64,000 nt of DNA from positions 186,001 to 250,000 of the IMG/VR virus record IMGVR_UViG_3300023174_000042; one strand, given 5' to 3'. This document shows, piece after piece, positions 739 to 27,550 of this stretch. A model generated the notes under the pieces. That model was not told where the DNA came from. It did not search any database and saw nothing but the letters and a program-made list of their open reading frames with translations. The translations under genes and the position numbers were made by a program. Every line of letters begins with the position of its first letter. The stretch's first letter is position 1.

Positions 739-2547
739 TTAGTCACCAAGAAGTTTTGAAAGATGGTCGTCTAAATCACCTAGTGTGCTATTAACTTTTT
801 GAAAATCCAAAAATTCATCTTCATCAAAATCATCATCCAAAGATTCTAAAATCAATTTATTTTTATCTTTTTTTATCGACTCTGGTACTGGGGGTGGTGC
901 CCCTCCTTCAGGTCCAGATGGAGGTGGTGGTGGTGCTCCACCGCCCGCTTCTTCACCAGCAGGGGCCGCTCCTCCACTAGTGGGTGTTCCTCCTGTTACT
1001 GGTTGATAAAGTCTATCTACGGTGCTAAAAATACCTGTCTTAGTGATTATTGTCGCGGTGTTATCGAGTTCTGCAGAAACCGCTCTTTCCATTCTAATTT
1101 GTAATAATTCATTTTTAATTTCATCATCAGAAAAACCAAAAATATGTTTTTTAGCCCAAGTTGCTGAAGTTGGTTGAATTGATTTAGCGATTTCACTAAC
1201 CATATCTTTATACAACGTTACTTTTTCTTTCCAAACATCAATCATTAGAAGGTCCGCTTGTTTTGATGGATTTGTAAGTTGTAATGTAAAATTTGATAAT
1301 TCATCTTCAAAACCCATTAAATATAAATGAATAATTGCGATTTTATTCATTTCGGCAATGGCCGATTTTTGAATTCTATTAATCGTTCTAGCAAATCTAA
1401 TATCCAAAAGAGAAAGATTTTTTCCATCACCAACTGGTTCTTCAAACCCAAGATACGCTTTAGGAACCCTTAATGCCGTGACCAATTTCTTTTGAATATA
1501 TTCAATATCAGCAATTTCAGAAAGGTTTGTTGCTCCCGGTAATGTATCAATCGGACTTGCTTGAGTGGCATCACGAACAGGTATGAAATAATCTTGATCC
1601 ACCGCCATTTGATTAAAACGTAAATCAACGTTTCCGGTTTTTCTATCAACAACCTGATCTCTTTTAAATTTGTTGGCAACTCTTTGAACATATGGTTCAA
1701 CATCTTTATCATCCATGTTCCCAACAAATACTTTAAACACCCTTCTTTCAGGAGCTCTTGATGTTCTATAAATTAACATCGCATCTTCAGATAAAACCAA
1801 TTGTTTCCAAATACGACGTGCTTTTTCTAACATTGACGTTCCATAAGGAAGTTTTCTATCATCACCCAATAATCTAAAGTGAGCAACTTCCCAAGTGTTA
1901 AACTCGGCGTCTCTTGCTTTCCATGAAAACTTTAAAGCCTTTCTGTTAACGTTTATTGTTGATTGAAAAGTTCTAGAATCCATACCCCTTTCTAATCTTT
2001 CAATTTCAATATTTGGTAATTGTAAACAACCTGTAACACCTTTTTCGTGATCTAACTTTAGATAAACAAAATTATCACCATATTTACACATATTTCTAAT
2101 CCACATAGGTAGATTAGTGTTAATATCTAAAACATTAACAAACAAATCGACTAAAATACTTTTGATTCTTTTTGACTCTGAATAAACTTGTAAAATGTAT
2201 CCATTTTGATCGGGTGTTGTTGATTCTTCGGCATATATGTCCAAAGCTGTTGAAATTTCAGGAGTATATTCCATCGATTCGTAATCATAAAACGCAGCCA
2301 ATCTTGTTGGTTCATAGTAAACGGCTTGTGTATAAAGATTATTTTCTACTTTAGCCCAATTGGTGCTAAGATATAATGATTGTTGATTTTGTAACTTAGC
2401 CCTTTCGTATTCGGCCTTATCTTGTGTTTTTAAAAGTTCTTTTTTATCTAATTTGTAATCTGGTTGCCCTTGACCTAAAGTAGAGTCAGGACCAAAGGTT
2501 TTTGCCAATCTTTGCCAAACCGTAAGATTTTGATTATTATTTTCCAT
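739..2547 (-). CDS. portal protein (T4 gp20-like)
   Basis: 602 aa with gp20-type motifs SMLEKARRIWKQLVLSEDAMLIYRTSRAPERRVF, DYFIP, IDTLPG and DIEYIQKKLVTALRVP; Pro/Gly-rich C-terminal tail; near TerL. Confidence 0.93.
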   Translation of the reverse strand: MENNNQNLTVWQRLAKTFGPDSTLGQGQPDYKLDKKELLKTQDKAEYERAKLQNQQSLYLSTNWAKVENNLYTQAVYYEPTRLAAFYDYESMEYTPEISTALDIYAEESTTPDQNGYILQVYSESKRIKSILVDLFVNVLDINTNLPMWIRNMCKYGDNFVYLKLDHEKGVTGCLQLPNIEIERLERGMDSRTFQSTINVNRKALKFSWKARDAEFNTWEVAHFRLLGDDRKLPYGTSMLEKARRIWKQLVLSEDAMLIYRTSRAPERRVFKVFVGNMDDKDVEPYVQRVANKFKRDQVVDRKTGNVDLRFNQMAVDQDYFIPVRDATQASPIDTLPGATNLSEIADIEYIQKKLVTALRVPKAYLGFEEPVGDGKNLSLLDIRFARTINRIQKSAIAEMNKIAIIHLYLMGFEDELSNFTLQLTNPSKQADLLMIDVWKEKVTLYKDMVSEIAKSIQPTSATWAKKHIFGFSDDEIKNELLQIRMERAVSAELDNTATIITKTGIFSTVDRLYQPVTGGTPTSGGAAPAGEEAGGGAPPPPPSGPEGGAPPPVPESIKKDKNKLILESLDDDFDEDEFLDFQKVNSTLGDLDDHLSKLLGD

Positions 2548-10749: not shown

Positions 10750-12792
10750 ATGTTAGAATTTATGGACGAAGGAAATGACAAATCTAAAAAAAAGAGTGAT
10801 AGCACAACTCCTGTTTTAGATAATTTTAGTAAAGACTTGAATAAGTTAGCACAAGAAGGAAAATTGGATCCTGTTATCGGAAGAAAAAAAGAAATTTTAA
10901 GAATTGCTCAAATTCTTTCAAGGAGGAAAAAAAATAATCCAATCATAATCGGTGAACCTGGAGCAGGAAAAACGGCAATTGTAGAAGGTTTAGCAATGAT
11001 GATTCATAATGGTGAATGTCCCAAAAATCTTATGGATAAAAGAATTGTATCATTAGATATGAATTCATTAGTTGCCGGAACTAAATACAGAGGTCAATTT
11101 GAAGAAAGAATGAAAGTAATTATTGAAGAATTACAATTGGCTCCAAATATTATTTTATTTATAGACGAAATTCACACCATTGTAGGAGCAGGAAATAGTT
11201 CAGGTTCGTTAGACGCTTCAAACATCTTCAAACCAGCACTTTCAAGAGGAGAAATTCAGTGTATTGGTGCCACAACACTTGACGAATACCGAACAAACTT
11301 TGAAAAAGACGGAGCGCTTGAGAGACGTTTTCAGAAAGTTATAGTTGATCCATCTTCAAAAGAAGAAACATTAGAAATTTTAATGTTAAGTAAATCAAAA
11401 TATGAAGATCACCATAAAGTTACCTATGATGAAAATACTTTAAAAATATTCGTTGAATTAGCAGATCGTTATATCACAGACAGAGAATTTCCTGACAAAG
11501 CATTTGATATATTGGATGAGGTTGGAGCAAGAATGCAAATTGATGTTAAATTACCAAAAGAAATAGAAGATTTAAAAGAAGAAGCAAATAAAATCAAACA
11601 AGAAAAAATAGACGTAATTAAAAAACAAGATTACGAACAAGCGGCCGAACTTCGTGATCGTGAAAGAAATGTTATTTCTAAACTTGATTTAGAGAAGAAA
11701 AAATTTGAGGAATTTTTAAAAAATAGCAAACGAAACATACCGGAAGAACTAATTTATGAAGTAGTATCTAACATGACAAAAATTCCTATTTCTAATATTA
11801 ATGTTGATGAAAAAAATAATTTAATTAATTTGAGTTCAAATTTGAATTCGAAAGTTATTGGTCAAGAAATTGCTGTTAACAAGATTTCAAAAGCAATCAG
11901 AAGAAACAGAATGGGAATCAAAGACCCAAATAAACCGATCGGTTCGTTTATATTTTTGGGGTCAACTGGTGTTGGTAAAACTTATTTAGCAAAACAATTA
12001 GCAAAAGAAATCTTTGGAAGTCCTGATAATATGATTCGAGTTGATATGAGTGAATACCAAGAAAAACACACAATATCGCGGCTTATTGGATCACCTCCAG
12101 GGTATGTTGGTCATGATGATGGGGGTCAATTAACAGAACAAGTAAAAAACAAACCTTACTCTGTTATATTATTTGACGAGATAGAAAAAGCACACAAAGA
12201 CATTTTCTCAACACTTCTTCAGTTGTTAGATGATGGTCATATTACAGATTCATTAGGTCGTAAAATTAACTTCAAAAATTGTTTAATTATTATGACTTCC
12301 AACATTGGAGTAAAAAAATTACAAGATTTTGGAACTGGAGTTGGTTTCAAGACCACAAAAAGTGATGTCGTTTTAGAAGAAGAAAAACAAGACGTTTTGA
12401 AAAAAGAACTAAAAAAGTTTTTTGCACCTGAGTTTTTGAATAGAATTGACGATGTTATTATTTTCAATAGTTTAGAAAAAAGTCATATTGATCAAATTAC
12501 AAAACTTGAAATTGATAAACTATTAAGTAGAGTTTTAGAAAAACATTATATCTTTTCTTACAACGATGATTTAATTGAATATATTTCTAAAGTAGGTTTT
12601 GATGAAACCTTTGGAGCAAGACCAATCAAGAGAGCAATTCAAGAAAAAATTGAAGATTTAATTTCAGAAAAAATATTAATGTCGGAAATTGAAGAAAATA
12701 AGGAATATGTTTTCAAAGTTGAAAATGATGAAATCATCGTAGTTGAAAAAGAAGAAAAACCAAAAAAAAGAAGTAGGAAAAAAAGCGAATAA
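10750..12792 (+). CDS. clpC: ClpC-type AAA+ chaperone lacking the N-terminal Clp repeat domain
   Basis: LDPVIGR, Walker A GEPGAGKT and GSTGVGKT, pore loops AGTKYRG and GYVG, UVR middle domain QDYEQAAELRD, ClpP-docking-type VGF loop, FGARP. Confidence 0.93.
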   Translation: MLEFMDEGNDKSKKKSDSTTPVLDNFSKDLNKLAQEGKLDPVIGRKKEILRIAQILSRRKKNNPIIIGEPGAGKTAIVEGLAMMIHNGECPKNLMDKRIVSLDMNSLVAGTKYRGQFEERMKVIIEELQLAPNIILFIDEIHTIVGAGNSSGSLDASNIFKPALSRGEIQCIGATTLDEYRTNFEKDGALERRFQKVIVDPSSKEETLEILMLSKSKYEDHHKVTYDENTLKIFVELADRYITDREFPDKAFDILDEVGARMQIDVKLPKEIEDLKEEANKIKQEKIDVIKKQDYEQAAELRDRERNVISKLDLEKKKFEEFLKNSKRNIPEELIYEVVSNMTKIPISNINVDEKNNLINLSSNLNSKVIGQEIAVNKISKAIRRNRMGIKDPNKPIGSFIFLGSTGVGKTYLAKQLAKEIFGSPDNMIRVDMSEYQEKHTISRLIGSPPGYVGHDDGGQLTEQVKNKPYSVILFDEIEKAHKDIFSTLLQLLDDGHITDSLGRKINFKNCLIIMTSNIGVKKLQDFGTGVGFKTTKSDVVLEEEKQDVLKKELKKFFAPEFLNRIDDVIIFNSLEKSHIDQITKLEIDKLLSRVLEKHYIFSYNDDLIEYISKVGFDETFGARPIKRAIQEKIEDLISEKILMSEIEENKEYVFKVENDEIIVVEKEEKPKKRSRKKSE

Positions 12793-15377: not shown

Positions 15378-16409
15378 ATGAATATAGAAAAATTTAAAGA
15401 ACTCTTATCTGTCCCAACCAAGACTTATAAAGAAAGTAAAATGGTTGAATACATATTGTCAGTTCTTGAGGGTATGGAAGGTGTGATTTATAACTACGAT
15501 GATCATAATAACATATACGCAACAAAAGGCTCATTAGAAGATGACGAGTTTTATCCCATGTTTATTTCTCATACAGACACGGTTCATGAACTTGTTGAAA
15601 AAATAGTTGTTAAAGAAGAACAACTTGTTCGCCCATTTACATTTGGAAAAGATTTCGGAAAAGATCAAGTTTTATGTTTAAAAGCATATGATAAAGATGA
15701 TAAACCAACAGGAATTGGTGGTGATGACAAATGTGGAATTTATATTTGTTTGGAACTTCTATCTCAATTAGACAAAGTTAAAGTGGCATTTTTTGTTTCA
15801 GAAGAAACGGGTTGTCACGGATCAAAATTTGTTGATAAAGAGTTTTTAAAAGACGTTGGTTACTGCGTTCAATATGACGCACCAGGAGATCATTTAATTT
15901 CTCAATCTTGTTTTGGAACCACTTTATTTGATAAAGAAGGAGAGTTTTTTAAATTATCACTTGAAGCGATCACAAAAGGGTTTGGTAATGAAATGATGGT
16001 TCAGTCTCATCCATATACCGATATTATGATGATTAAACAACAATCTGATCTATCTTGTATCAATATGTCATGTGGTTATTATAATATGCACACAGCAAAC
16101 GAATTTGTTTGTATCGATGACGTTCAAAGAGCAATTGAATCAGGAAAAAACATGGTAAAAGATCTTGGTTTAAAAAAATATGAATTTAAATATAATGAAC
16201 CAAAACCAACAAAATCTTTACTACCGTTTGATGATTTCGATGAAAACCCATTTTATGATGATGTTCATCAATTAACTTCGATTGACATAATTGAAGATAA
16301 AGATGGTATTATAATCTCGGATATATACGATGAAAACCAATTTTTTATTGATGATGAAGATGGTTACAAATTATATGAGATTTTAAAAGAACGTTATCGT
16401 CTTAATTGA
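15378..16409 (+). CDS. M20/M28-family zinc peptidase
   Basis: Metal ligands SHTDTV, GGDDKCG, EETG and the C-terminal GYYNMHTANE; TATATTTG promoter. Confidence 0.85.
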   Translation: MNIEKFKELLSVPTKTYKESKMVEYILSVLEGMEGVIYNYDDHNNIYATKGSLEDDEFYPMFISHTDTVHELVEKIVVKEEQLVRPFTFGKDFGKDQVLCLKAYDKDDKPTGIGGDDKCGIYICLELLSQLDKVKVAFFVSEETGCHGSKFVDKEFLKDVGYCVQYDAPGDHLISQSCFGTTLFDKEGEFFKLSLEAITKGFGNEMMVQSHPYTDIMMIKQQSDLSCINMSCGYYNMHTANEFVCIDDVQRAIESGKNMVKDLGLKKYEFKYNEPKPTKSLLPFDDFDENPFYDDVHQLTSIDIIEDKDGIIISDIYDENQFFIDDEDGYKLYEILKERYRLN

Positions 16410-17527
16410 CCTGGATCAATTCTAAACTCAGTTGGGTTAAATAAACCTGGCTGAGTTACCATTTGAATTACCTCATTAGCAGACGCCAAACCATATTTAC
16501 GATCACCAAAATAACTACCTGAACCGATTAAATATTTTACCTTTAATGTTTCAGGATCAACTGACTCCACTTTTATAAATAAATTTTTTTGACCTGGAAT
16601 TTCTTTTCTATAAAATAAATTCAAAGATGAAAGCTTATCTATAATTTTTCTAAATTCAGAAGAAAATTCTTCTTGGGCTCTTTCTATATATTCATCAATC
16701 AAATCAACTAATTTTTCACAAGACTCAGATTCAAACATTTCATCATCCATTACATAATATTCCATTTCGTAATGTTCAGGAAGACCATGTATAAATTTTT
16801 TATATATTTTTTGAATTAATACGTCAAGAACTTTTCCATCAAATTCACCATCTTCAATAAATAACTGTACCAGATTACCCCAACTTATAAAGTATAATCC
16901 AAAACACCACTTACCCCATTTTTCAACTCCAAACTGACTAAGTGTTTCACAATATTCTTTTTCGATTGCTTCTTTAGCTCCCGATTCAGTTGCATTCGCT
17001 TTAGCAGAACATATAATCTCATCTATTTCATCTGCAATATGTTGAAAGTATTTGTCTAATACACTTGTAATCGCACCTTCATCATCAATTCTACCGTTTT
17101 CATGAATATTATCAACAAGGTTAGGTGAGATTATTTTAAGTAATTCTTTTAATCTGATTTTTGCTTCACGACAAAGATATCCTAAAGTATATCCCTCACT
17201 CCAATCGTCGTATGCTCGATCTTGACACTCACTATAAAAATCATAAGAACCATAATACATACGATCATAGTTAATAGCATCCCACTCACCGTCAGTTCCT
17301 TCTTCAAATGTAGGATAATGAAAAAACTTTAAAAACTGTTCTAAATCATCAAAATCAAATAATAGACCATCAGGTTTTACTTGAACATGATTTAAGTTCA
17401 AACCTTCATGATTATCACTTTTGAATTCAACATCATCGGAAGACAACTTTCTTTTATTTAAAAGAAGAATTTTTTGAAAGTCCGTCATTTCTGAAACATC
17501 ATTTTCTACTAAAAGTCTTTTTTTCAT
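16394..17527 (-). CDS. acidic hypothetical protein with a short tag
   Basis: 377 aa; starts MKKRLLVE; TATTTATA upstream. Confidence 0.75.
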   Translation of the reverse strand: MKKRLLVENDVSEMTDFQKILLLNKRKLSSDDVEFKSDNHEGLNLNHVQVKPDGLLFDFDDLEQFLKFFHYPTFEEGTDGEWDAINYDRMYYGSYDFYSECQDRAYDDWSEGYTLGYLCREAKIRLKELLKIISPNLVDNIHENGRIDDEGAITSVLDKYFQHIADEIDEIICSAKANATESGAKEAIEKEYCETLSQFGVEKWGKWCFGLYFISWGNLVQLFIEDGEFDGKVLDVLIQKIYKKFIHGLPEHYEMEYYVMDDEMFESESCEKLVDLIDEYIERAQEEFSSEFRKIIDKLSSLNLFYRKEIPGQKNLFIKVESVDPETLKVKYLIGSGSYFGDRKYGLASANEVIQMVTQPGLFNPTEFRIDPGQLRR

Positions 17528-17594
17528 ATATTTATAAATATATTGGATAATACAAATCTTTGTATTATATTTGTATAGAAGTTATTTGACATAT

Positions 17595-18002
17595 GGGCCT
17601 ATATCGGAATTGACGGGCGTTGGTTGAATAAAAGAAGCATGTAGGGACTAAGTTAATCTCTTTAAAAACTGACTTAGAAAACAACTGGCAATGTGCTAAA
17701 CAAAATGGAAACTCTTGGTTTACTAAGAGGTTCTGAAGTTACTGTAGCTTAAGAAGTTTACGGAAACGCGAGCCGGTTCACATACGCTCAGGAACAGAAG
17801 TGATGAAGGTGAAATACAACTGAACCATAAATCGAGTTGTCTATTGGTTTTTAATTTACGATAGTGAAGAACAAATTAAAATTGTTTTTGATCAAGTAAA
17901 AATCAAATATTTTGGGGTATTAGAAAATACCAACCTAAACATGTAGTTGTCTTTTAGACAAAACGAGCCGGACGAGGGAGTCGGAGCCCTCTAGGTCCAC
18001 CA
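17595..18002 (+). ncRNA. ssrA: tmRNA
   Basis: 5' GGGCCTA pairs with 3' TAGGTCC-A-CCA, giving the G3:U70 Ala identity pair; GGAATTGAC D-loop analog; internal tag ORF at 17687-17752; TATATTTG promoter upstream and terminator downstream. Confidence 0.93.
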
Positions 18003-18007
18003 ATTGA

Positions 18008-18040
18008 TCCCACTATTTAATTATGGTGGGATTTTTTTTG
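18008..18040 (+). terminator. intrinsic terminator after tmRNA
   Basis: ATCCCAC...GTGGGAT hairpin followed by a T run. Confidence 0.75.
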
Positions 18041-18059
18041 TGCCTTAGTTTTAAAGCAT

Positions 18060-18095
18060 AAAAAAAGGGATCAATTGATCCCTGAATTTTTTTTG
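18060..18095. terminator. bidirectional terminator
   Basis: A-tract, GGGATC-AATT-GATCCC hairpin, T-tract, between convergent RNA genes. Confidence 0.7.
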
Positions 18096-18132
18096 CCGGT
18101 TTTTGCTCCATTTCTAAAAAAGAAAAATAAAA

Positions 18133-18940
18133 ACGCTGAGATTACACGTCGTGTTTGAGAACCTTTAGAGTCATTATTGTTTCTACTCTTATCCACTTTC
18201 TTTTGGAAAGTATTTCTCAGTGCTGGTTATTTAGGTGAACCACTCCTTGAGATCTTATCTACTCTCTTACTACTCGATACTCTTCGAGGATGCCTCCCCA
18301 ATTGATCCTTGCGGGACTAGAGATCTTTTGTAAAACTACACTCGGTCTTGGGAACCTAATGTGCCACGGACAACCCGTGACTAAGTAAGCACCTTTCAAC
18401 AAGATCTGACGGACACTTTTCCTTATTTATAATTAATTGTTTAATGATAATTAAGTTTTGTGTCGTGGATTGTCGAAGTAGTGGTCCGCCACCAGAGCCA
18501 ACCCATCTTTTGAACGAGTCGATACTCAACTACTCCGTGAAATGTCCCCATTTCCATACTTCAAGAACTCTTCGAATTATTACCTTGGTGGGTAATTAAT
18601 AAGGACGATGTCAGCACCACCTGTTACTCATCTTGTCTTTCGACGTTAAGATTCCTTTGATATTGGAACTCGCAATTAAAGTGTTGGAGCACTTAGTTTT
18701 GCAAAAATCCCTACGAGTTATTCCTATTGGTGTCCCCACCTCAATTAGACGACCCACATCGCCCAATCATCTAACCACTTTCCCTACAGCGTCGCCCTCG
18801 GTACTAAAGGTTAAACGGTATCCCGCTTGTGTACTCGACCTCAATTATCCGAAGACAACTAAGACGCAAACCATATAACACAAATGGTTCACTTTATCCC
18901 ACTTTCGTGGTTTATTTTAATGGACCATACACGGCCCAAT
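18133..18940 (-). ncRNA. large structured ncRNA, GOLLD-like
   Basis: ~810 nt, GC-richer than its flanks, no credible ORF, dense hairpins with GNRA loops on the minus strand (CCAC-GAAA-GTGG, GTC-GAAA-GAC, TCCC-GCAA-GGA); own promoter and boxA. Family assignment rests on size and context only. Confidence 0.65.
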
Positions 18941-22812: not shown

Positions 22813-22848
22813 TTTTTTTCTTTTTTTTTAATTAAACAATATTTTTTG

Positions 22849-22935
22849 CGGTCTCGAAGGGAGTCGAACCCTCTTTTTCGTTTACCTACTTGCTACCGTG
22901 ACAGGGTAGTGCACCAACCATTATGCGCCGAGACC
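22849..22935 (-). tRNA. tRNA-Asp(GTC) with an unusually long variable region
   Basis: Acceptor GGTCTCG/CGAGACC, G73, anticodon arm CTACC-CTGTCAC-GGTAG, T-loop TTCGACT, ~19-nt variable region. Confidence 0.85.
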
Positions 22936-22940
22936 AATTA

Positions 22941-23219
22941 TTATATCAAAGCGTCCCATTCAGACACAATAAATTCAAGTTTTAAAAGACCCTCAACTGA
23001 AATGTAGGTTACATGAAAACCTCCTGAAGCAACATCTGTTTCACTTTCTATTGCTTGAGTTAAAAGTTGTCTTGCTTTTTCTCTAATTTCACCTTGACAA
23101 GGAATTTTTTCTTCACTACCTACCCATTCCCAACGAAGAGCTTTCATAGTTTTATGAACTTTTTCAAAGTCAAACCAATCCATAATGTTGTCTATCGCTT
23201 TTCTTTGTTCTTCTGTCAT
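22941..23219 (-). CDS. hypothetical protein
   Basis: 92 aa; FDFEKVHKTM...W-W...SGGF pattern. Confidence 0.7.
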   Translation of the reverse strand: MTEEQRKAIDNIMDWFDFEKVHKTMKALRWEWVGSEEKIPCQGEIREKARQLLTQAIESETDVASGGFHVTYISVEGLLKLEFIVSEWDALI

Positions 23220-23242
23220 GTTTTAAACATAATAATATTTTT

Positions 23243-23713
23243 TTATAATGATTGCACTTGTTCCATAATTTCTGATACTTCATGAGGTTCTAAATAACCA
23301 ATCACATCGTTTGTCACAGAAGTTTCATAAGTTAGTTTTCCATCTTTATCTAAAACAGCAACTTCAAACAAACCATCTTTACCACCGTAAGAAAATGTGT
23401 GAGACACAACACTAACACCAAATCCATTATCAAACTGTAGTCTTGCTTGTTTTCCAACCATGTGTGGAGCATCATCAAGCATTTCAAATTCCAGATCTTC
23501 AAATTTTTTCATAACTTTTATTTTTTTTGTTTCTTTTAATACTGTTTTTGCACAAGCTTTGCCAAATGAAAATCCACCTTGACTTTCATGATTTGTAGGA
23601 AAACTATTTGAGTCATAATAATTTCCGTCAGTTAAAGATAATTCTAACCAAACGGCAGTTTTTGGATTTATCTTGTCTCCACATTTTTCACAATAAATTA
23701 TTTTGTCATTCAT
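23243..23713 (-). CDS. hypothetical protein (possibly two fused small domains)
   Basis: N-terminal CxxC...C part and a C-terminal FDNGFGVSVV...SYGG...FEVAVL...DVIGYL domain; TATCTTTG promoter. Confidence 0.7.
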   Translation of the reverse strand: MNDKIIYCEKCGDKINPKTAVWLELSLTDGNYYDSNSFPTNHESQGGFSFGKACAKTVLKETKKIKVMKKFEDLEFEMLDDAPHMVGKQARLQFDNGFGVSVVSHTFSYGGKDGLFEVAVLDKDGKLTYETSVTNDVIGYLEPHEVSEIMEQVQSL

Positions 23714-23784
23714 TAAACAAAGATAAATAGAATATTTTATACTATCAAATTTTTTACAAAAAAAAATTTACAATTTAAGGTTTG

Positions 23785-23856
23785 TAGCCCATCCCGGTAA
23801 CGCTCCGAGATTTGTTGGATGAAAACCAACTGTCCTTACTTTTAGACGAATGGGCC
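23785..23856 (-). tRNA. tRNA-Glu(TTC) with a non-canonical T-loop
   Basis: GGCCCAT/ATGGGCT acceptor, GTTGG-TTTTCAT-CCAAC anticodon arm, T-loop AGCGTTA. Confidence 0.8.
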
Positions 23857-23863
23857 GTAAATT

Positions 23864-23924
23864 AGGGTAGACACGGGCTTAGCTAGCCGTCTTTCAGGAA
23901 AAGCCCTTTTTCATATTCTACCCT
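23864..23924 (-). ncRNA. candidate ~60-nt structured RNA between tRNAs
   Basis: AGGGTAGA/TCTACCCT closing stem with an inner GGGCTT/AAGCCC stem. Confidence 0.45.
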
Positions 23925-23929
23925 ACTTG

Positions 23930-24002
<73 letters not shown>

Positions 24003-24007
24003 ATGTG

Positions 24008-24081
24008 TAGTTAATACTGGACTCGAACCAATGACCTATTCCGTATCAGGGAATCGCTCTAACCAACTGAGCTAATTAACT
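24008..24081 (-). tRNA. tRNA-Ile(GAT)
   Basis: Canonical cloverleaf; anticodon arm ATTCC-CTGATAC-GGAAT. Confidence 0.92.
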
Positions 24082-24094
24082 ATTAATATTTTCG

Positions 24095-24175
24095 TACTGA
24101 CGGTTGGATTCGAACCAACGTTTTCAACTTACCACTACAGGTATAGATGATATAAGCATCCACTGGTACGCCAGC
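24095..24175 (-). tRNA. D-armless tRNA-like RNA, apparent anticodon TAT
   Basis: Acceptor GCTGGCG/CGTCAGT and a perfect T arm; only 7 nt before the GGATG-CTTATAT-CATCT arm; 25-nt variable region. Confidence 0.6.
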
Positions 24176-24182
24176 TTATTTG

Positions 24183-24254
24183 TGGTATGGGAGTGGATTC
24201 GAACCACCGGCACAAGTTTTTCACACTTTGCTCTACCTACTGAGCTACCACACC
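24183..24254 (-). tRNA. tRNA-Phe(GAA), aberrant
   Basis: Canonical D and T loops; 4-bp anticodon stem AAGT-GTGAAAA-ACTT; one extra C between T stem and acceptor stem. Confidence 0.65.
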
Positions 24255-24359
24255 ATTTTTTTGTAATTAATAGTTGATACACACTCTCGTTTCACCATCT
24301 TGTATCAACAGGTTAATGTACTTTACGAGTTTCCCTTTTCTTACAATCACAATATTTTT

Positions 24360-24466
24360 AAATCAAAGAACTTTTTCCCTTTTGTGGTGGGGGTGAGACC
24401 ACCATCACACTTTCTCACCCCCTTGTTTGTTATACAAATATATGTAGTTTATTTTAAACTGACAAA
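24360..24466 (-). promoter_or_regulatory. promoter, leader hairpin and boxA-like element of the tRNA operon
   Basis: TTTG...TATATTTG promoter, GGGGGTGAGA/TCTCACCCCC hairpin, then GTTCTTTGAT. Confidence 0.7.
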
Positions 24467-24554
24467 TCTTTATTAAACTTTTTTTTAATTTGTCTAAAAA
24501 TAAAAAACCCCACCTCTTTTCGAAGATGGGGTCGTAAAAGGTCATAAATAAAAT

Positions 24555-25304
24555 TTAAATAACTTCTCTTGTGTCAATATGTGCCTCATACATTAATCTT
24601 CTTGTTGATAAAGATCTGTAATAATAATAGTCTTCCAAAATAGACTCAAACAAACCGCTCACAAATCCTGATGCCGCATCCCAAGCATTTGAAAGTCCTT
24701 TCCCAACTGCCTGTGCCCCGCTTTGAATAGCGCTTCCTACCGCTTGAGCTCCTTTTTTAATTCCTTGTCCTACAGCTTGAACACCACCTTTAACAAAGTT
24801 GTATGCTTTATTCAACATGTTTCCTGCAAATTGTTTTACGTAAGACCAAAGTTCAGCAATTTTTGAGGCGGCGATAACTGCGGCCCCCCAAGCGGCTTGT
24901 CCTAATTTCCATATGGCATCAAACATAGATTTAAAAAATTGTAATATGTTTGTAGATGCTTTACTGATAAAACTAGAAATTTGATTTGCGGTATATTTAA
25001 TGGTTTGAGCGGCACCAATTACTATACCTTTAACTTGTTTTGCAAGTGCGGTTAAAAAACTCAAAATAACATTTCCAATTGCCTGTGCCACTTTAAAAGT
25101 AGCCTGACCAAGTTTAATTCCAACAATTGCAGGAAGAAAAATGATTGTCAATGAAATTTGACCAATTTTAATTACCGTTTGTTTGACAGCTTTACCAGCC
25201 TGAAAGCCAGCTTTGAATGCCGCGCTTTGGACATTTTGTTCTGAAATAACTTGTTTGATAACTTTTATCAAATCATTTTCAGTTAATTTTATTACCTTTT
25301 TCAT
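24555..25304 (-). CDS. tagged amphipathic Ala/Gly-rich helical-repeat protein
   Basis: MKKVIKLTENDLIKVIKQVISE tag; 11-residue GAQAVG repeats; hydrophobic segments. Confidence 0.75.
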   Translation of the reverse strand: MKKVIKLTENDLIKVIKQVISEQNVQSAAFKAGFQAGKAVKQTVIKIGQISLTIIFLPAIVGIKLGQATFKVAQAIGNVILSFLTALAKQVKGIVIGAAQTIKYTANQISSFISKASTNILQFFKSMFDAIWKLGQAAWGAAVIAASKIAELWSYVKQFAGNMLNKAYNFVKGGVQAVGQGIKKGAQAVGSAIQSGAQAVGKGLSNAWDAASGFVSGLFESILEDYYYYRSLSTRRLMYEAHIDTREVI

Positions 25305-25360
25305 AACTTTTTTTATTTATAAATACATCGTAAGTTGAAAAAATTTTGCAAAAGAAAAAA

Positions 25361-25816
25361 TCATCGACAATGGTAATCTGCAGCTCTTGTTGCGATTTGA
25401 TTATCAGGTTTTATATTTGCCTTATAACCCAATGACGTAACCAATCCAACGGCAGGAGATACGAGTTTTGAACTAAAATGTTTTTCTTGTGAATTATAGT
25501 CCAAATCGATCTCAATTTTTACACTTATTTTACTTGACAACCAATTTGCGACCTCAACAGAATGTTCACATTCAGTCCAAAGACGTGTCCATTTATCTTT
25601 TATTTTTCTTACCTTTTGTTTATGATAAATGTAATGAACACCCCTGTTTCCAAATCTATATGCAATTGCTGTTACATATACAGTATTTCTTCTGTGATTT
25701 TGTGAATCAGTTCCTATATGGATTTCTACATATGGACATTCTTTTAAAATATCAATTGTATGATTTACTATATCAAAAACAGCGTCTCCTTCTACTTTTT
25801 TAAATACCCTGTTCAT
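25361..25816 (-). CDS. RNase H-like YkuK (DUF458) family protein
   Basis: IHIGTDSQ...RLWTE---SVEVA...EIDLDYN...IKPD--IA--AAD. Confidence 0.85.
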   Translation of the reverse strand: MNRVFKKVEGDAVFDIVNHTIDILKECPYVEIHIGTDSQNHRRNTVYVTAIAYRFGNRGVHYIYHKQKVRKIKDKWTRLWTECEHSVEVANWLSSKISVKIEIDLDYNSQEKHFSSKLVSPAVGLVTSLGYKANIKPDNQIATRAADYHCR

Positions 25817-25917
25817 AAATTGATTTGGGTGAGAAAATTCAAAATTTTATTATAATTTCTGTTGTATGAAATATTTGACTATCGATCACTCCTTTTATAA
25901 ATAGTATTAACAAAATA

Positions 25918-26526
25918 CTAATAAACAAAATCAACAAAAAAATAAAAAATTCCATTGTCATAAAAAACACAAGTTGCCGCAATTGTGTTTGATTTATATC
26001 CTTTATCTAAAAAGTAAGTGTTATGTAATAAAGATCTTTGTGTACATCGGTGCATATATGATTTTTCCCAACACATAATCATGTGATCTGCCAATTGTTC
26101 ATATGTATCCATTTTATATGTCGTATACCCACAATTTTCACTTAGAGTTAATTTAAATCCTTTGTTATTTGTTGGGTAAACTTCATCTAAAAATAAAAAT
26201 TGATTATTTTTATCACTCCACCAAGATGATCTATCAACATGAAATAATTTTTTTTGTTTTACATTTTCAAGGGCATTTGGTAAAACAATAGTATCATATA
26301 AAAGTTCTGACCAAATAAGTTTCATCAACTGATTGTTATTTTCCAACATAGGCCAAGCGGATAAAAGATTTTTACCATAACCAGTTGTAGTTATGGTGTC
26401 TCTGAAAGCGTTTAACTTGTCGAATAAAACTTTCGATGCGTGTTTAGAATCAAAATTGTTGTAGTCAATATTTTGTGAAAAAGAAATGTGACCAATAAAA
26501 AGAAGGATTGTTAGGATATTTTTCAT
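25918..26526 (-). CDS. secreted divergent CAP-like protein
   Basis: Signal peptide; LNAFR, LFH, SENC and WEKSYMH parallel the CAP motifs of 12843..13355. Confidence 0.6.
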   Translation of the reverse strand: MKNILTILLFIGHISFSQNIDYNNFDSKHASKVLFDKLNAFRDTITTTGYGKNLLSAWPMLENNNQLMKLIWSELLYDTIVLPNALENVKQKKLFHVDRSSWWSDKNNQFLFLDEVYPTNNKGFKLTLSENCGYTTYKMDTYEQLADHMIMCWEKSYMHRCTQRSLLHNTYFLDKGYKSNTIAATCVFYDNGIFYFFVDFVY

Positions 26527-26543
26527 ATTACAAATAAAAAAAA

Positions 26544-27041
26544 TTATTTTACTTCAAAAGCACATCTCATAATTTTTTTTGTTTTAACAGAATCCTCGAA
26601 GTTTCCTATAACAACACCATCTTTGATTGTAAATGCGTGTTGTCTAACTAAAACAAAAAATGTACCTTTTGGGTTTTGTTTAATAAAAGTCCCAACGGTC
26701 ATTTGTCTTAATTTGGTTTCACCTTTGATTGTAACATTATAAGACAAAGAATTAATCAATGTAGAACTTTTCCTTACTCCAACTGTGTGAATTTTTTTAT
26801 TATTGATTAATGTATTATTATCAACCATTTTTAAAAGTTTTGTTATAGTCCCAAAAGTTCCTTTTTTTGGTTTTCTTTGAAATTCTTTTGCGACATATTT
26901 GTGAGCGTCATCATAAGGAATTTCAAATGAAGATGCAAATGCTCTAACAACACAATCGTTTGTTTCTGATTTTGCGATTACAGATTCAGAATATCCTTGA
27001 ATCGCTTTTGATGTGGCTTCGTATGGGAGTTTGTTTTTCAT
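26544..27041 (-). CDS. hypothetical protein (DCVVRA...H motif, papain-like dyad possible)
   Basis: NDCVVRAFA...RQHAFTIKDG; probable start MKNKL directly after TATCTTTG. Confidence 0.65.
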   Translation of the reverse strand: MKNKLPYEATSKAIQGYSESVIAKSETNDCVVRAFASSFEIPYDDAHKYVAKEFQRKPKKGTFGTITKLLKMVDNNTLINNKKIHTVGVRKSSTLINSLSYNVTIKGETKLRQMTVGTFIKQNPKGTFFVLVRQHAFTIKDGVVIGNFEDSVKTKKIMRCAFEVK

Positions 27042-27173
27042 ACTACAAAGATACAAAAAATTTTTAAATCAAACCATATTGGTGTAATTCATATAAAAAT
27101 TTTTCATATTCCTCTGAGTTTATAAACTCTTCATGTAGTTGATAAAATATTTCTTCCATAATTTTAATATTTG

Positions 27174-27450
27174 TGATCCCGAATGGATTCGAACCATTGA
27201 CCTACTGCTTAGACATACCACTATAGTTTTCACTACCAACTTAATTGTTGTTTGTGGTCTGGACTTTCTCTTTACCTTATCTTTCGACTTAGGCACTCAC
27301 CGTCAAGTCTCTACACCTTCTTCTTTTCAGAAGCTTGGCTCGGGATTACCATTTTACAGGCTTCCCCGAATTTGATGAGTTCTATTTAATCGTTTCCAAC
27401 TAAACGCCCCCTTTGAGGCAGTTGCTCTATTCCAGCTGAGCTACGGGACC
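27174..27450 (-). tRNA. tRNA-Arg(TCT) interrupted by a group I intron
   Basis: 5' exon 27450-27416 and 3' exon 27213-27174 join to give ACTGC-CTTCTAA-GCAGT and a canonical cloverleaf. Confidence 0.92.
27214..27415 (-). mobile_element. group I intron (IC3-like, 202 nt, no ORF)
   Basis: P AAATTCGGGGAA, Q AATCCCGAGC, R GTAGAGACTTGACG, S AAGAGAAAGTCC; P1 GCCT^C/GGGGC with a U:G pair; terminal G. Confidence 0.9.
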
Positions 27451-27465
27451 ATATTTTACATTTAG

Positions 27466-27550
27466 CAGAGGAGGAGGGATTCGAACCCCCGGATCCGTAA
27501 AGATCAACGGTTTTCAAGACCGCCTCATTCGACCGCTCTGACACTCCTCT
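27466..27550 (-). tRNA. tRNA-Ser(TGA)
   Basis: GCGGT-CTTGAAA-ACCGT anticodon arm, long variable arm GATC-TTTACG-GATC, G73. Confidence 0.93.

What the first reader, a model, noticed from the sequence alone, without database searches (positions are those of the whole stretch)
17687..17752. tmRNA with an unusually long tag and non-canonical T-loop
Seen: the probable resume codon after ACAACT gives (A)GNVLNKMETLGLLRGSEVTVA*, 21 encoded residues ending VTVA. The T-arm is GAGGG-AGTCGGAG-CCCTC instead of a TTCRAAT loop. Known: bacterial tags are usually about 10 aa ending in ALAA or LAA. Inference: the tag may reroute or spare rescued proteins, and the altered loop may avoid host nucleases or modification.
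Basis: partly seen in the sequence, partly recalled or inferred. Interest (0 to 1): 0.6.

Follow-up and report, generated by a model that had tools for sequence, protein, structure and literature searches.

The report
Jumbo-phage tmRNA with odd T-loop
A giant freshwater phage carries its own ribosome-rescue RNA (tmRNA) that encodes a conserved 21-residue tag and has an eight-base elbow loop in place of the near-universal seven-base one; this variant recurs in many uncultured phages, was not found in the bacterial tmRNAs sampled, and is missed by the standard tmRNA finder.

Summary
Rfam calls a full-length one-piece tmRNA at 17595-18002 (+), 64.9 bits against a cut-off of 47. The window lies in a 272.6-kb, 30% G+C virus record, a jumbo phage. 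The tag frame GGC...GCU UAA (17687-17752) is the true one. It is open for 21-22 codons in 52 related viral loci with 14 distinct peptides. Synonymous changes are enriched in this frame (43% against 21% and 3% in the other two). The frame starts 9 nt after PK1, and its stop codon lies in the loop of a covarying helix 5. The T-arm is GAGGG-AGUCGGAG-CCCUC. The identical 8-nt loop sits on four covarying T-stems and on viral tmRNAs with unrelated tags. It was absent from 401 sampled Bacteroidota genomes. In the one MAG that has it, it is a second, low-scoring tmRNA copy.

G3:U70, A73, CCA and the D-loop GG..GAC/GGAC elements are invariant, so the RNA looks functional. The phage has no SmpB, AlaRS or EF-Tu and must use the host's. 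The tmRNA sits in a conserved block: N-domain-less ClpC-like ATPase, M42/M20 peptidase, an orphan protein, the tmRNA, then GOLLD RNA.

Verdict: a new variant of a known kind, of moderate interest.

The parts
17595..18002 (+). One-piece tmRNA gene (408 nt), with CCA encoded
   Evidence: RF00023 full-length hit, 64.9 bits, E 4.7e-23. In 33 aligned family members RNAalifold finds 55 pairs, 25 of them with compensatory changes.
17566..17573 (+). Possible Bacteroidota-type -7 promoter box TATATTTG (TAnnTTTG), 21 nt upstream of the mature 5' end, with TTG about 20 nt further upstream; inference only
   Evidence: Read from the sequence. A sigma-70-like match at 17544-17571 overlaps it. SD-less leaders suggest a Bacteroidota-like host.
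17595..17601 (+). 5' strand of the acceptor stem, GGGCCUA; G3 pairs with U70
   Evidence: It pairs with UAGGUCC at 17992-17998. G:U at pair 3 is present in 33 of 33 sequences, and pairs 4-5 covary (CG/GC/UA).
17602..17614 (+). D-loop analogue UAUCGGAAUUGAC, with invariant GG and GAC
   Evidence: Invariant columns G12 G13 A14 T16 G18 A19 C20.
17643..17677 (+). Pseudoknot PK1: AGGGA/UCUCU and CUAAGU/ACUUAG
   Evidence: The second stem is predicted with compensatory changes (alignment columns 57-63 / 78-84). The first stem was read from the sequence and varies in step across the alignment (AGGGA/UCUCU, CGGGA/UCUCG, GGAGA/UCUCC, by eye).
17678..17686 (+). Single-stranded leader AAAACAACU before the resume codon (A at -4)
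   Evidence: Sequence. The Rfam alignment places the resume codon here. The 9-nt spacing from PK1 is conserved.
17687..17752 (+). Tag reading frame: resume codon GGC, 21 codons, stop UAA; predicted appended peptide A-GNVLNKMETLGLLRGSEVTVA
   Evidence: Open for 21-22 codons in 52 loci with 14 peptide variants. Synonymous share of codon differences is 43% here, against 21% and 3% in the other frames.
17738..17767 (+). Helix 5: GUUaCUGU / ACGGaAAC, with GCU UAA in its loop
   Evidence: 7 pairs are predicted. Pair 149:174 switches U-A to A-U together with a synonymous GUU/GUA change.
17974..17991 (+). T-arm: stem GAGGG/CCCUC with the 8-nt loop AGUCGGAG (17979-17986)
   Evidence: The same loop occurs on stems CGGGG/CCCCG, GCGGG/CCCGC and GUGGG/CCCAC. 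MAFFT aligns it to the canonical UUCGAGU as a 1-nt insertion plus U54>G and A58>G.
17992..18002 (+). 3' acceptor strand UAGGUCC, discriminator A, CCA
   Evidence: Sequence. The columns for T402, CC, A405 and CCA are invariant.
18006..18041 (+). Intrinsic terminator, starting 4 nt after CCA
   Evidence: 11-bp stem followed by T8. Folding z-score is -4.4, with 0 of 200 shuffles folding as well.
10750..12792 (+). Context: ClpC-like double AAA+ unfoldase (680 aa) without the N-domain but with a ClpP-docking-type loop (GVGF)
   Evidence: Pfam AAA, AAA_lid_9, UVR, AAA_2 and ClpB_D2-small. It aligns to residues 151-792 of S. aureus ClpC at 720 bits. It is present upstream of the tmRNA in every family locus with enough flank.
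15378..16409 (+). Context: M42/M20-type metallopeptidase (343 aa)
   Evidence: phrog_4191 peptidase at 134.7 bits. Pfam Peptidase_M42 and M20 match weakly. Found in 40 of 46 family loci.
16394..17527 (-). Context: conserved orphan protein (377 aa), divergent from the tmRNA
   Evidence: No Pfam or PHROG hit. AF2 pLDDT is 87.7. No fold match in PDB, BFVD, pdb_via_wide or the ESM Atlas. 24 distinct homologues at 26-81% identity in viral loci holding a tmRNA T-arm.
18095..18920 (-). Context: GOLLD RNA, convergent with the tmRNA; the Rfam core is 18133-18537 and its 5' half probably extends to about 18920
   Evidence: RF02032 at 309 bits. Metatranscriptome contigs cover 18095-18920 but not the flanking genes. 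Found 3' of the tmRNA in 27 of 46 family loci.

Best explanation
This is a functional tmRNA encoded by a jumbo phage. Shown: it has the full one-piece architecture, namely an acceptor stem with G3:U70, A73 and CCA, the D-loop analogue, P2, PK1, a resume codon, a tag frame whose stop lies in the loop of helix 5, a T-arm and its own terminator. The fold is kept by compensatory changes, and the tag frame is kept as protein across a family of uncultured freshwater phages. Inferred: the phage has no SmpB, AlaRS or EF-Tu, so host AlaRS charges the RNA, and host SmpB and EF-Tu carry it to ribosomes stalled on broken mRNAs during infection. Translation resumes at GGC and adds Ala plus 21 residues. The tag's invariant hydrophobic-Ala end marks the truncated protein for an AAA+ protease. 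The most likely reader is a Clp-type machine, possibly the phage's own N-domain-less ClpC-like unfoldase docked on host ClpP, with the neighbouring M42/M20 peptidase helping to recycle peptides. The 8-nt T-loop is best read as an alternative elbow: U55, C56 and R57 are kept for the contacts with the D-loop GG, the U54-A58 pair is replaced by G54-G58, and one A is inserted 5' of position 54. The loop sequence is under selection and travels with the rest of the tRNA-like domain as a cassette that has been exchanged among close relatives. Why it is favoured is not shown. My leading guess is that it changes recognition by a factor that reads the T-loop, such as modification enzymes or a tmRNA-directed host or rival-phage factor.
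For: Identity and fold: RF00023 at 64.9 bits; 25 of 55 pairs carry compensatory changes; G3:U70 is present in 33 of 33; terminator.

Tag frame: conserved in 52 loci, synonymous share 43% against 21% and 3%; stop codon in the helix 5 loop.

Phage setting: the window is part of a 272,576-bp virus record with one tmRNA.

Dependence on the host: no SmpB, AlaRS, EF-Tu, RF/ArfB, Lon or ClpP in the phage.

Loop under selection: the identical 8-nt loop sits on four covarying stems and on tmRNAs with unrelated tags. Across the 22 loop types found on stem GAGGG/CCCUC, positions 54/58 are U/A or G/G and never mixed.

Loop apparently viral: 0 of 401 Bacteroidota genomes have it; 31 of 31 Bacteroidota tmRNAs have UUCRAnn; the one MAG with it also has an ordinary tmRNA at 184.7 bits.

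Cassette exchange: at least 3 switches of loop type on the ClpC-like tree, and identical tags occur with both loop types.

Proteolysis neighbourhood.

RNA presence: contigs of a 90-95% identical relative cover the tmRNA in one metatranscriptome.
Against: There is no direct evidence of charging, SmpB binding, tagging or degradation. The RNA evidence for the tmRNA itself is thin: one run, assembled contigs of a relative, low depth. The link to the ClpC-like gene and the peptidase rests on gene order among related phages, which share order by descent. The phage lacks ClpP, so that route needs host ClpP. The Bacteroidota host is inferred only from SD-less leaders and base composition. The G54-G58 reading of the loop comes from alignment and covariation of loop types, not from a structure. 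An 8-nt T-loop might weaken elbow contacts with the ribosome or SmpB.
Confidence: 0.65

Rival explanations
1. The RNA is a working tmRNA, but the tag is not a degradation signal. Its 21 conserved residues give rescued fragments another fate, such as binding to a phage factor, sequestration or protection.
For: The whole length of the tag is conserved, not only its end (G1, N/D2, G11-L12 and the E-V-T/A-V-A block). That is more than a minimal C-terminal degron needs. The tag is unlike the 8-10-aa tags of the presumed host phylum.
Against: All 14 variants end in V/L-A with an invariant terminal Ala, the hallmark of known tags. Long tags can still be degrons: the 27-aa Mycoplasma tag is read by Lon (PMC8403727). 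No phage protein carries a similar motif or C-terminus that would point to a binding partner.
Confidence: 0.15
2. The RNA is a decoy. Its altered elbow lets it bind host SmpB or AlaRS without completing trans-translation, so it blocks host ribosome rescue, as proposed for the TLD-only RNA of mycobacteriophage DS6A.
For: A TLD-only phage RNA has been reported to inhibit tmRNA (PMC4131195, PMC11915505). The T-loop departs from the canonical form. The Rfam score is low (64.9 against 93-198 bits in Bacteroidota).
Against: A decoy needs no reading frame. Yet the frame, the stop in the helix 5 loop and PK1 are all conserved, with a coding-type substitution pattern. Sister tmRNAs with the same tag have canonical loops, so the tag is used with either elbow.
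Confidence: 0.07
3. The 8-nt loop has no adaptive meaning. It is a tolerated neutral variant that spread by descent and recombination in one group of phages.
For: Both loop types occur in near-identical phage backgrounds with identical tags, so either works. No factor that discriminates between them is known.
Against: All eight loop bases are identical across four different stems and across tmRNAs with unrelated tags and lengths of 348-454 nt, which points to constraint on the loop sequence itself. However, my searches required the exact loop, so near-variants would have been missed.
Confidence: 0.3
4. It is a decaying or non-functional copy, or merely the remnant of an integration site (attP) at a host ssrA gene.
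For: ssrA is a common integration site, and ARAGORN does not recognise this gene.
Against: The gene is complete, lies 203 kb into a 272.6-kb phage record, and has its own terminator. It is conserved with compensatory changes in dozens of contigs. Its tag is unlike those of the sampled bacteria.
Confidence: 0.03

Closest known systems
Standard one-piece bacterial tmRNA (SsrA, Rfam RF00023)
   Same: Acceptor stem with G3:U70, A73 and CCA; D-loop GG..GAC and 3' GGAC; P2; PK1 about 10 nt before the resume codon; tag frame ending in the helix 5 loop; 5-bp T-stem; overall length about 400 nt.
   Different: The T-loop has 8 nt (AGUCGGAG) with G at 54 and 58, where 31 of 31 Bacteroidota tmRNAs have the 7-nt UUCRAnn. 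The tag has 21 codons against a mode of 10 (PMC11915505). The resume codon is GGC (Gly), not GCN. The gene is phage-encoded with no SmpB alongside. The Rfam score is low.
Known phage tmRNAs (mycobacteriophages Bxz1, Cali, Catera and others; Bacillus phage G; huge phages of Al-Shayeb et al. 2020)
   Same: A tmRNA carried by a large phage together with tRNAs and other translation-related genes (PMC4131195, PMC7162821).
   Different: Those were found with ARAGORN, which misses all 36 distinct 8-nt-loop tmRNAs tested here. Some huge phages also carry SmpB; this one does not. blastn found no relative among 50,697 deposited phage genomes. I did not examine the T-loops of the published phage tmRNAs.
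Long Mycoplasma ssrA tag read by Lon
   Same: A tag well over 20 residues that still works as a degron; its length and sequence are tuned to a particular protease (27 aa in M. pneumoniae, PMC8403727).
   Different: The phage has no Lon. The nearby AAA+ gene is ClpC-like. The tag sequences are unrelated. Which protease reads this tag is unknown.
Phage tRNAs that escape host tRNA nucleases through loop changes
   Same: A phage-borne copy of a host translation RNA that differs from the host's in a loop (PMC10264068). tmRNA-binding domains are predicted in CoCoNuT defence systems (PMC11090510).
   Different: The known cases concern anticodon loops and experimentally known nucleases. Here the change is in the T-loop of a tmRNA, and no nuclease or reader is known. 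This is an analogy only.

Membership tests
One-piece tmRNA (RF00023) | Scores above the curated covariance-model threshold over the full model | tested here: met
   64.9 bits against a gathering score of 47, model positions 1-374.
One-piece tmRNA (RF00023) | tRNA-Ala-like acceptor: 7-bp stem, G3:U70, discriminator A73, CCA | tested here: met
   GGGCCUA/UAGGUCC-A-CCA. G:U is present in 33 of 33 family members, and other pairs covary.
One-piece tmRNA (RF00023) | D-loop analogue with GG and GAC, plus the 3' GGAC before the T-stem (SmpB-binding region) | tested here: met
   These are invariant columns in 33 sequences.
One-piece tmRNA (RF00023) | Near-universal (not strictly defining) 7-nt T-loop of the form UUCRAnn | tested here: not met
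   The loop is AGUCGGAG, 8 nt. Hence I file it as a variant and not as an ordinary member.
One-piece tmRNA (RF00023) | PK1 followed by a short single strand and a resume codon | tested here: met
   One PK1 stem has compensatory changes; the other varies in step across the alignment (by eye). The spacer is 9 nt, and Rfam places the resume codon at GGC.
One-piece tmRNA (RF00023) | Short conserved reading frame ending in a stop codon within helix 5, with a non-polar Ala-terminal tag | tested here: met
   The tag ends VTVA (VAVA or VLA in relatives).
One-piece tmRNA (RF00023) | Pseudoknots PK2-PK4 between helix 5 and P2 | tested here: inconclusive
   This region varies in length (family members 384-420 nt). 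Only one hairpin (alignment columns 351-367) shows clear covariation, and the tools do not predict pseudoknots.
One-piece tmRNA (RF00023) | Alanylation, SmpB and EF-Tu binding, and tagging activity | not testable with these tools
   These need biochemistry. The phage itself lacks SmpB, AlaRS and EF-Tu.
Phage-encoded tmRNA | The gene lies inside a phage genome and not at a prophage-host junction | tested here: met
   It lies at 203,595-204,002 of a 272,576-bp virus record with CheckV completeness 93%. Phage genes flank it on both sides.
ClpC-type unfoldase (for the neighbouring gene 10750-12792) | Two AAA+ modules, a short M-domain with a UVR motif, a ClpP-docking (I/L/V)GF loop, and an N-terminal Clp_N domain | tested here: inconclusive
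   AAA, UVR, AAA_2 and D2-small are present. GVGF aligns to the AGF loop of S. aureus ClpC. The N-domain is absent, since the alignment starts at ClpC residue 151. It is therefore ClpC-like and not a full ClpC.
GOLLD RNA (RF02032; neighbour) | Scores above the curated threshold | tested here: met
   309.4 bits against 150.

The most novel reading that the evidence does not exclude
The phage runs its own tagging-and-disposal circuit. Its tmRNA writes a phage-specific degron that is read by the phage's N-domain-less ClpC-like unfoldase on host ClpP, and not by the host's usual adaptors. The G54-G58 eight-base elbow makes the RNA invisible or resistant to a host (or rival-phage) factor that recognises or modifies the canonical tmRNA T-loop. 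Canonical and 8-nt tRNA-like-domain cassettes would then be swapped among phages under arms-race selection.
Probability: 0.12. Interest if true: 0.8.

Novelty: new variant of a known kind. Interest (0 to 1): 0.5.

Why it matters
The T-loop is one of the most conserved RNA motifs known, and the tmRNA elbow contacts both SmpB and the ribosome. A natural, widespread and strictly conserved 8-nt version with G54/G58 is a ready-made test of what that elbow must do. It also shows that surveys based on ARAGORN undercount phage tmRNAs. The conserved long tag, with a Clp-type unfoldase and a peptidase nearby, suggests that large phages manage the truncated proteins produced during infection in their own way. 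The conserved adjacency to GOLLD, whose function is unknown, adds a tmRNA neighbour to GOLLD's known association with tRNA clusters.

Tried and rejected
1. Alternative tag frames. GCA AUG UGC UAA (AMC) at 17688-17699 is not conserved in L025 or L034. ARAGORN's low-threshold tag AQEQK at 17786-17806 lies about 100 nt beyond PK1 and inside the variable region. Both are rejected.
2. Lon as the neighbour. The PHROG label 'ATP-dependent protease' for ORF 10750-12792 turned out to be a ClpC-like unfoldase. There is no Lon_C in the phage.
3. A phage ClpP, SmpB, AlaRS, EF-Tu or RF/ArfB. None was found.
4. Relatives among cultured phages. blastn found none.
5. The scan of all bacterial genomes for the loop used too loose a pattern. 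It filled its 120 rows mostly with chance hits in high-GC actinomycete coding DNA, and only one real T-arm (L239) emerged. It is therefore not an exhaustive test of absence in bacteria.
6. The orphan 377-aa neighbour as a hidden SmpB-like or RNA-handling protein. There was no sequence, feature or fold match in any library.
7. A tag-like C-terminus or core motif in the phage's own proteins. None was found.
8. The T-loop as the sole reason ARAGORN fails. Swapping in a canonical loop in silico did not rescue detection.
9. 'Relatives' of a virus record cannot be drawn by the genome search.
10. Complex prediction was not used, because the tag (22 aa) is below its 30-residue minimum.

Full report
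WHAT IS THERE. Rfam finds a full-length one-piece tmRNA at window 17595-18002 on the + strand (64.9 bits, gathering score 47, E 4.7e-23). ARAGORN at default settings does not call it. At very permissive thresholds it finds the same boundaries but proposes an implausible tag. The window is part of a 272,576-bp IMG/VR virus record (30% G+C, CheckV completeness 93%). The record holds this single tmRNA and six tRNAs. It is therefore a tmRNA encoded by a jumbo phage.

THE TAG. I collected relatives by scanning IMG/VR for the T-arm and extracted full tmRNAs by matching acceptor strands. The GGC frame is open for 21-22 codons in all 52 loci of the family and gives 14 distinct but clearly related peptides. 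Examples are GNVLNKMETLGLLRGSEVTVA, GNVLNNLETLGLISTQEVTVA, GDVLSKMEVIGLVRTSEVTVA and GDNIINKLSSVGLIRTEEVAVA. Of all pairwise codon differences, 43% are synonymous in this frame, against 21% and 3% in the two other frames. The frame starts 9 nt after PK1. Its last codons form the 5' strand of helix 5, with GCU-UAA in the loop. A U-A to A-U switch in that helix coincides with a synonymous GUU/GUA change. The two other candidate frames are not conserved.

Against bacteria the tag is long. The commonest tag length is 10 aa (PMC11915505), and 31 Bacteroidota tmRNAs fetched here have 8-10 aa ending in LAA or MAA. It is not without precedent: M. pneumoniae has 27 aa (PMC8403727). The other viral tmRNAs seen here have putative tags of 13-32 aa, picked by an ORF heuristic.

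THE FOLD. An alignment of 33 distinct family members gives 55 consensus pairs, 25 of them with compensatory double changes. The supported elements are the acceptor stem, P2, one stem of PK1, helix 5 and a 3' hairpin. G3:U70 is present in 33 of 33 sequences. The discriminator A, CCA, the D-loop GG..GAC and the 3' GGAC are invariant. An intrinsic terminator follows CCA after 4 nt (z = -4.4). Everything needed for recognition by AlaRS, EF-Tu and SmpB, as far as sequence can show it, is intact.

THE T-LOOP. The arm is GAGGG-AGUCGGAG-CCCUC (17974-17991).
- The identical loop occurs on stems CGGGG/CCCCG, GCGGG/CCCGC and GUGGG/CCCAC. It also occurs on viral tmRNAs of 348-454 nt whose tags are unrelated to this one, for example ANDNAFAPVAQAA and ANTVIEKVKGFFTADNYGFDQLAAA. 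Five of these were confirmed as full RF00023 hits at 63-115 bits.
- Sister tmRNAs with the same tag family carry canonical loops such as UUCGAGU, UUCGAAU and UUCGAGA. MAFFT aligns the 8-nt loop to them as one inserted A followed by G-U-C-G-G-A-G. That keeps U55, C56 and G57 and changes U54 to G and A58 to G.
- Among the 22 loop types found on stem GAGGG/CCCUC in viral contigs, positions 54/58 are U/A in 18 types and G/G in 4, and never mixed. This fits replacement of the U54-A58 tertiary pair by a G-G pair. That reading is an inference from covariation, not from a structure.
- On a tree of the neighbouring ClpC-like protein, the loop types are interspersed. Well-supported branches force at least 3 switches, and one canonical-loop phage nests inside the window's own tight clade. 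Identical tags occur with both loop types. The acceptor stem, D-loop and first P2 pairs differ along with the loop. So the tRNA-like domain behaves as a cassette exchanged among close relatives.

IS THE LOOP VIRAL? In 401 sampled Bacteroidota genomes the loop pattern was not found. All 31 fetched Bacteroidota tmRNAs have 7-nt UUCRAnn loops. It gave one true case, a 28-kb, 38% G+C contig in a Desulfobacteraceae MAG. That MAG also has an ordinary tmRNA at 184.7 bits, so the odd-looped one (79.9 bits) is a second copy, probably viral or mis-binned. Cellular tmRNAs with this loop are thus not excluded in general, but none was seen as a cell's own tmRNA.

ARAGORN at default settings found 0 of 36 distinct 8-nt-loop tmRNAs, 10 of 17 canonical viral ones, and 31 of 31 Bacteroidota ones. 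Surveys that rely on it (PMC7162821, PMC11915505) would miss this family. The loop alone does not explain the failure, because swapping in a canonical loop did not rescue detection.

SETTING AND LIKELY MECHANISM. The phage has no SmpB, AlaRS, EF-Tu, RF/ArfB, Lon or ClpP, so the RNA must work with host partners. Shine-Dalgarno motifs are depleted upstream of its ORFs (2% against a 7% background) and the leaders are A/T-rich. Together with 30% G+C and a freshwater source, this points to a Bacteroidota host. That is an inference.

The gene order is conserved in the family, even where the proteins are only 26-60% identical. It runs:
- a ClpC-like unfoldase with two AAA+ modules, a UVR motif, a GVGF ClpP-docking-type loop and no N-domain;
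- an M42/M20-type peptidase;
- an orphan 377-aa protein;
- the tmRNA;
- GOLLD RNA.

Because these phages are kin, shared order is weak evidence of a functional tie. I therefore rate the idea that the tag is read by phage ClpC-like plus host ClpP as a lead and not a finding. The invariant V/L-Ala end of the tag favours a degron over a protective tag.

EXPRESSION. The stretch occurs in lake, pond and other freshwater metagenomes from ten studies. In four metatranscriptome runs from three studies, assembled contigs cover 18095-18920 (GOLLD and its upstream half) but not the flanking protein genes. The tmRNA is covered only in one run, by two contigs of a 90-95% identical relative. Assembled contigs cannot show RNA ends or levels. 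This is good evidence that GOLLD is present as RNA and weak evidence for the tmRNA family.

VERDICT. The object is a functional-looking phage tmRNA, a new variant of a known kind. It is defined by a strictly conserved 8-nt G54/G58 T-loop seen here only in viral or virus-like tmRNA copies, and by a conserved 21-22-residue tag. Interest is moderate at 0.5.

Noticed in passing
window 18095-18920 (-): A GOLLD RNA (RF02032, 309 bits, core 18133-18537) lies tail-to-tail with the tmRNA. It is found just 3' of the tmRNA in 27 of 46 family loci. Metatranscriptome contigs from three studies cover about 18095-18920 but not the neighbouring genes. The 'ORF' at 18633-18878, which tblastn shows as conserved, is therefore most likely the 5' half of GOLLD and not a gene.
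   Followed up: partly
L044, L051, L094, L118, L147, L054, L153 and about 60 other viral loci: Many small viral contigs carry permuted (two-piece) tmRNAs (RF04321/RF01849, 60-137 bits). Their T-loops are also non-canonical: UGCRAnn (G at position 55) or GGCRGnn (G at 54 and 58). Most have a TTGACA-17-TATAAT promoter about 55 nt upstream of the T-arm. Non-canonical elbows thus seem common in viral tmRNAs.
   Followed up: partly
window 23784-23856 (-): The phage tRNA-Glu has a T-arm CUCGG-AGCGUUA-CCGGG and a D-loop AAAAGUAA without the usual GG, so its elbow is non-canonical on both sides. It is conserved in L017 (96% identity, with a compensatory change in the anticodon stem). The other five phage tRNAs have ordinary UUCGA loops.
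   Followed up: partly
window 16394-17527 (-): This 377-aa protein next to the tmRNA is conserved, with 24 distinct homologues at 26-81% identity. It folds confidently (pLDDT 87.7) but matches nothing in Pfam, PHROGs, PDB, BFVD or the ESM Atlas.
   Followed up: yes
window 10750-12792 (+): This ClpC-like unfoldase lacks the N-terminal adaptor-binding domain but keeps a ClpP-docking-type GVGF loop, in a phage with no ClpP of its own. It may redirect host ClpP.
   Followed up: partly
L239 (JASFHE010000010.1, 27,997 bp, 38% G+C), about 2178-2525 (+): A contig binned into a Desulfobacteraceae MAG carries a 348-nt tmRNA with the same 8-nt loop on stem CGGGG/CCCCG and a possible 28-residue tag. The MAG also has an ordinary tmRNA on another contig, so this contig is probably viral or mis-binned.
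   Followed up: partly
window 22848-27550 (-): A cluster of six tRNAs (Asp, Glu, Met, Ile, Phe, Ser) lies 5-9 kb downstream of the tmRNA and GOLLD. The tRNA-Asp call is 88 nt long, with an unusually long variable region for that type.
   Followed up: no
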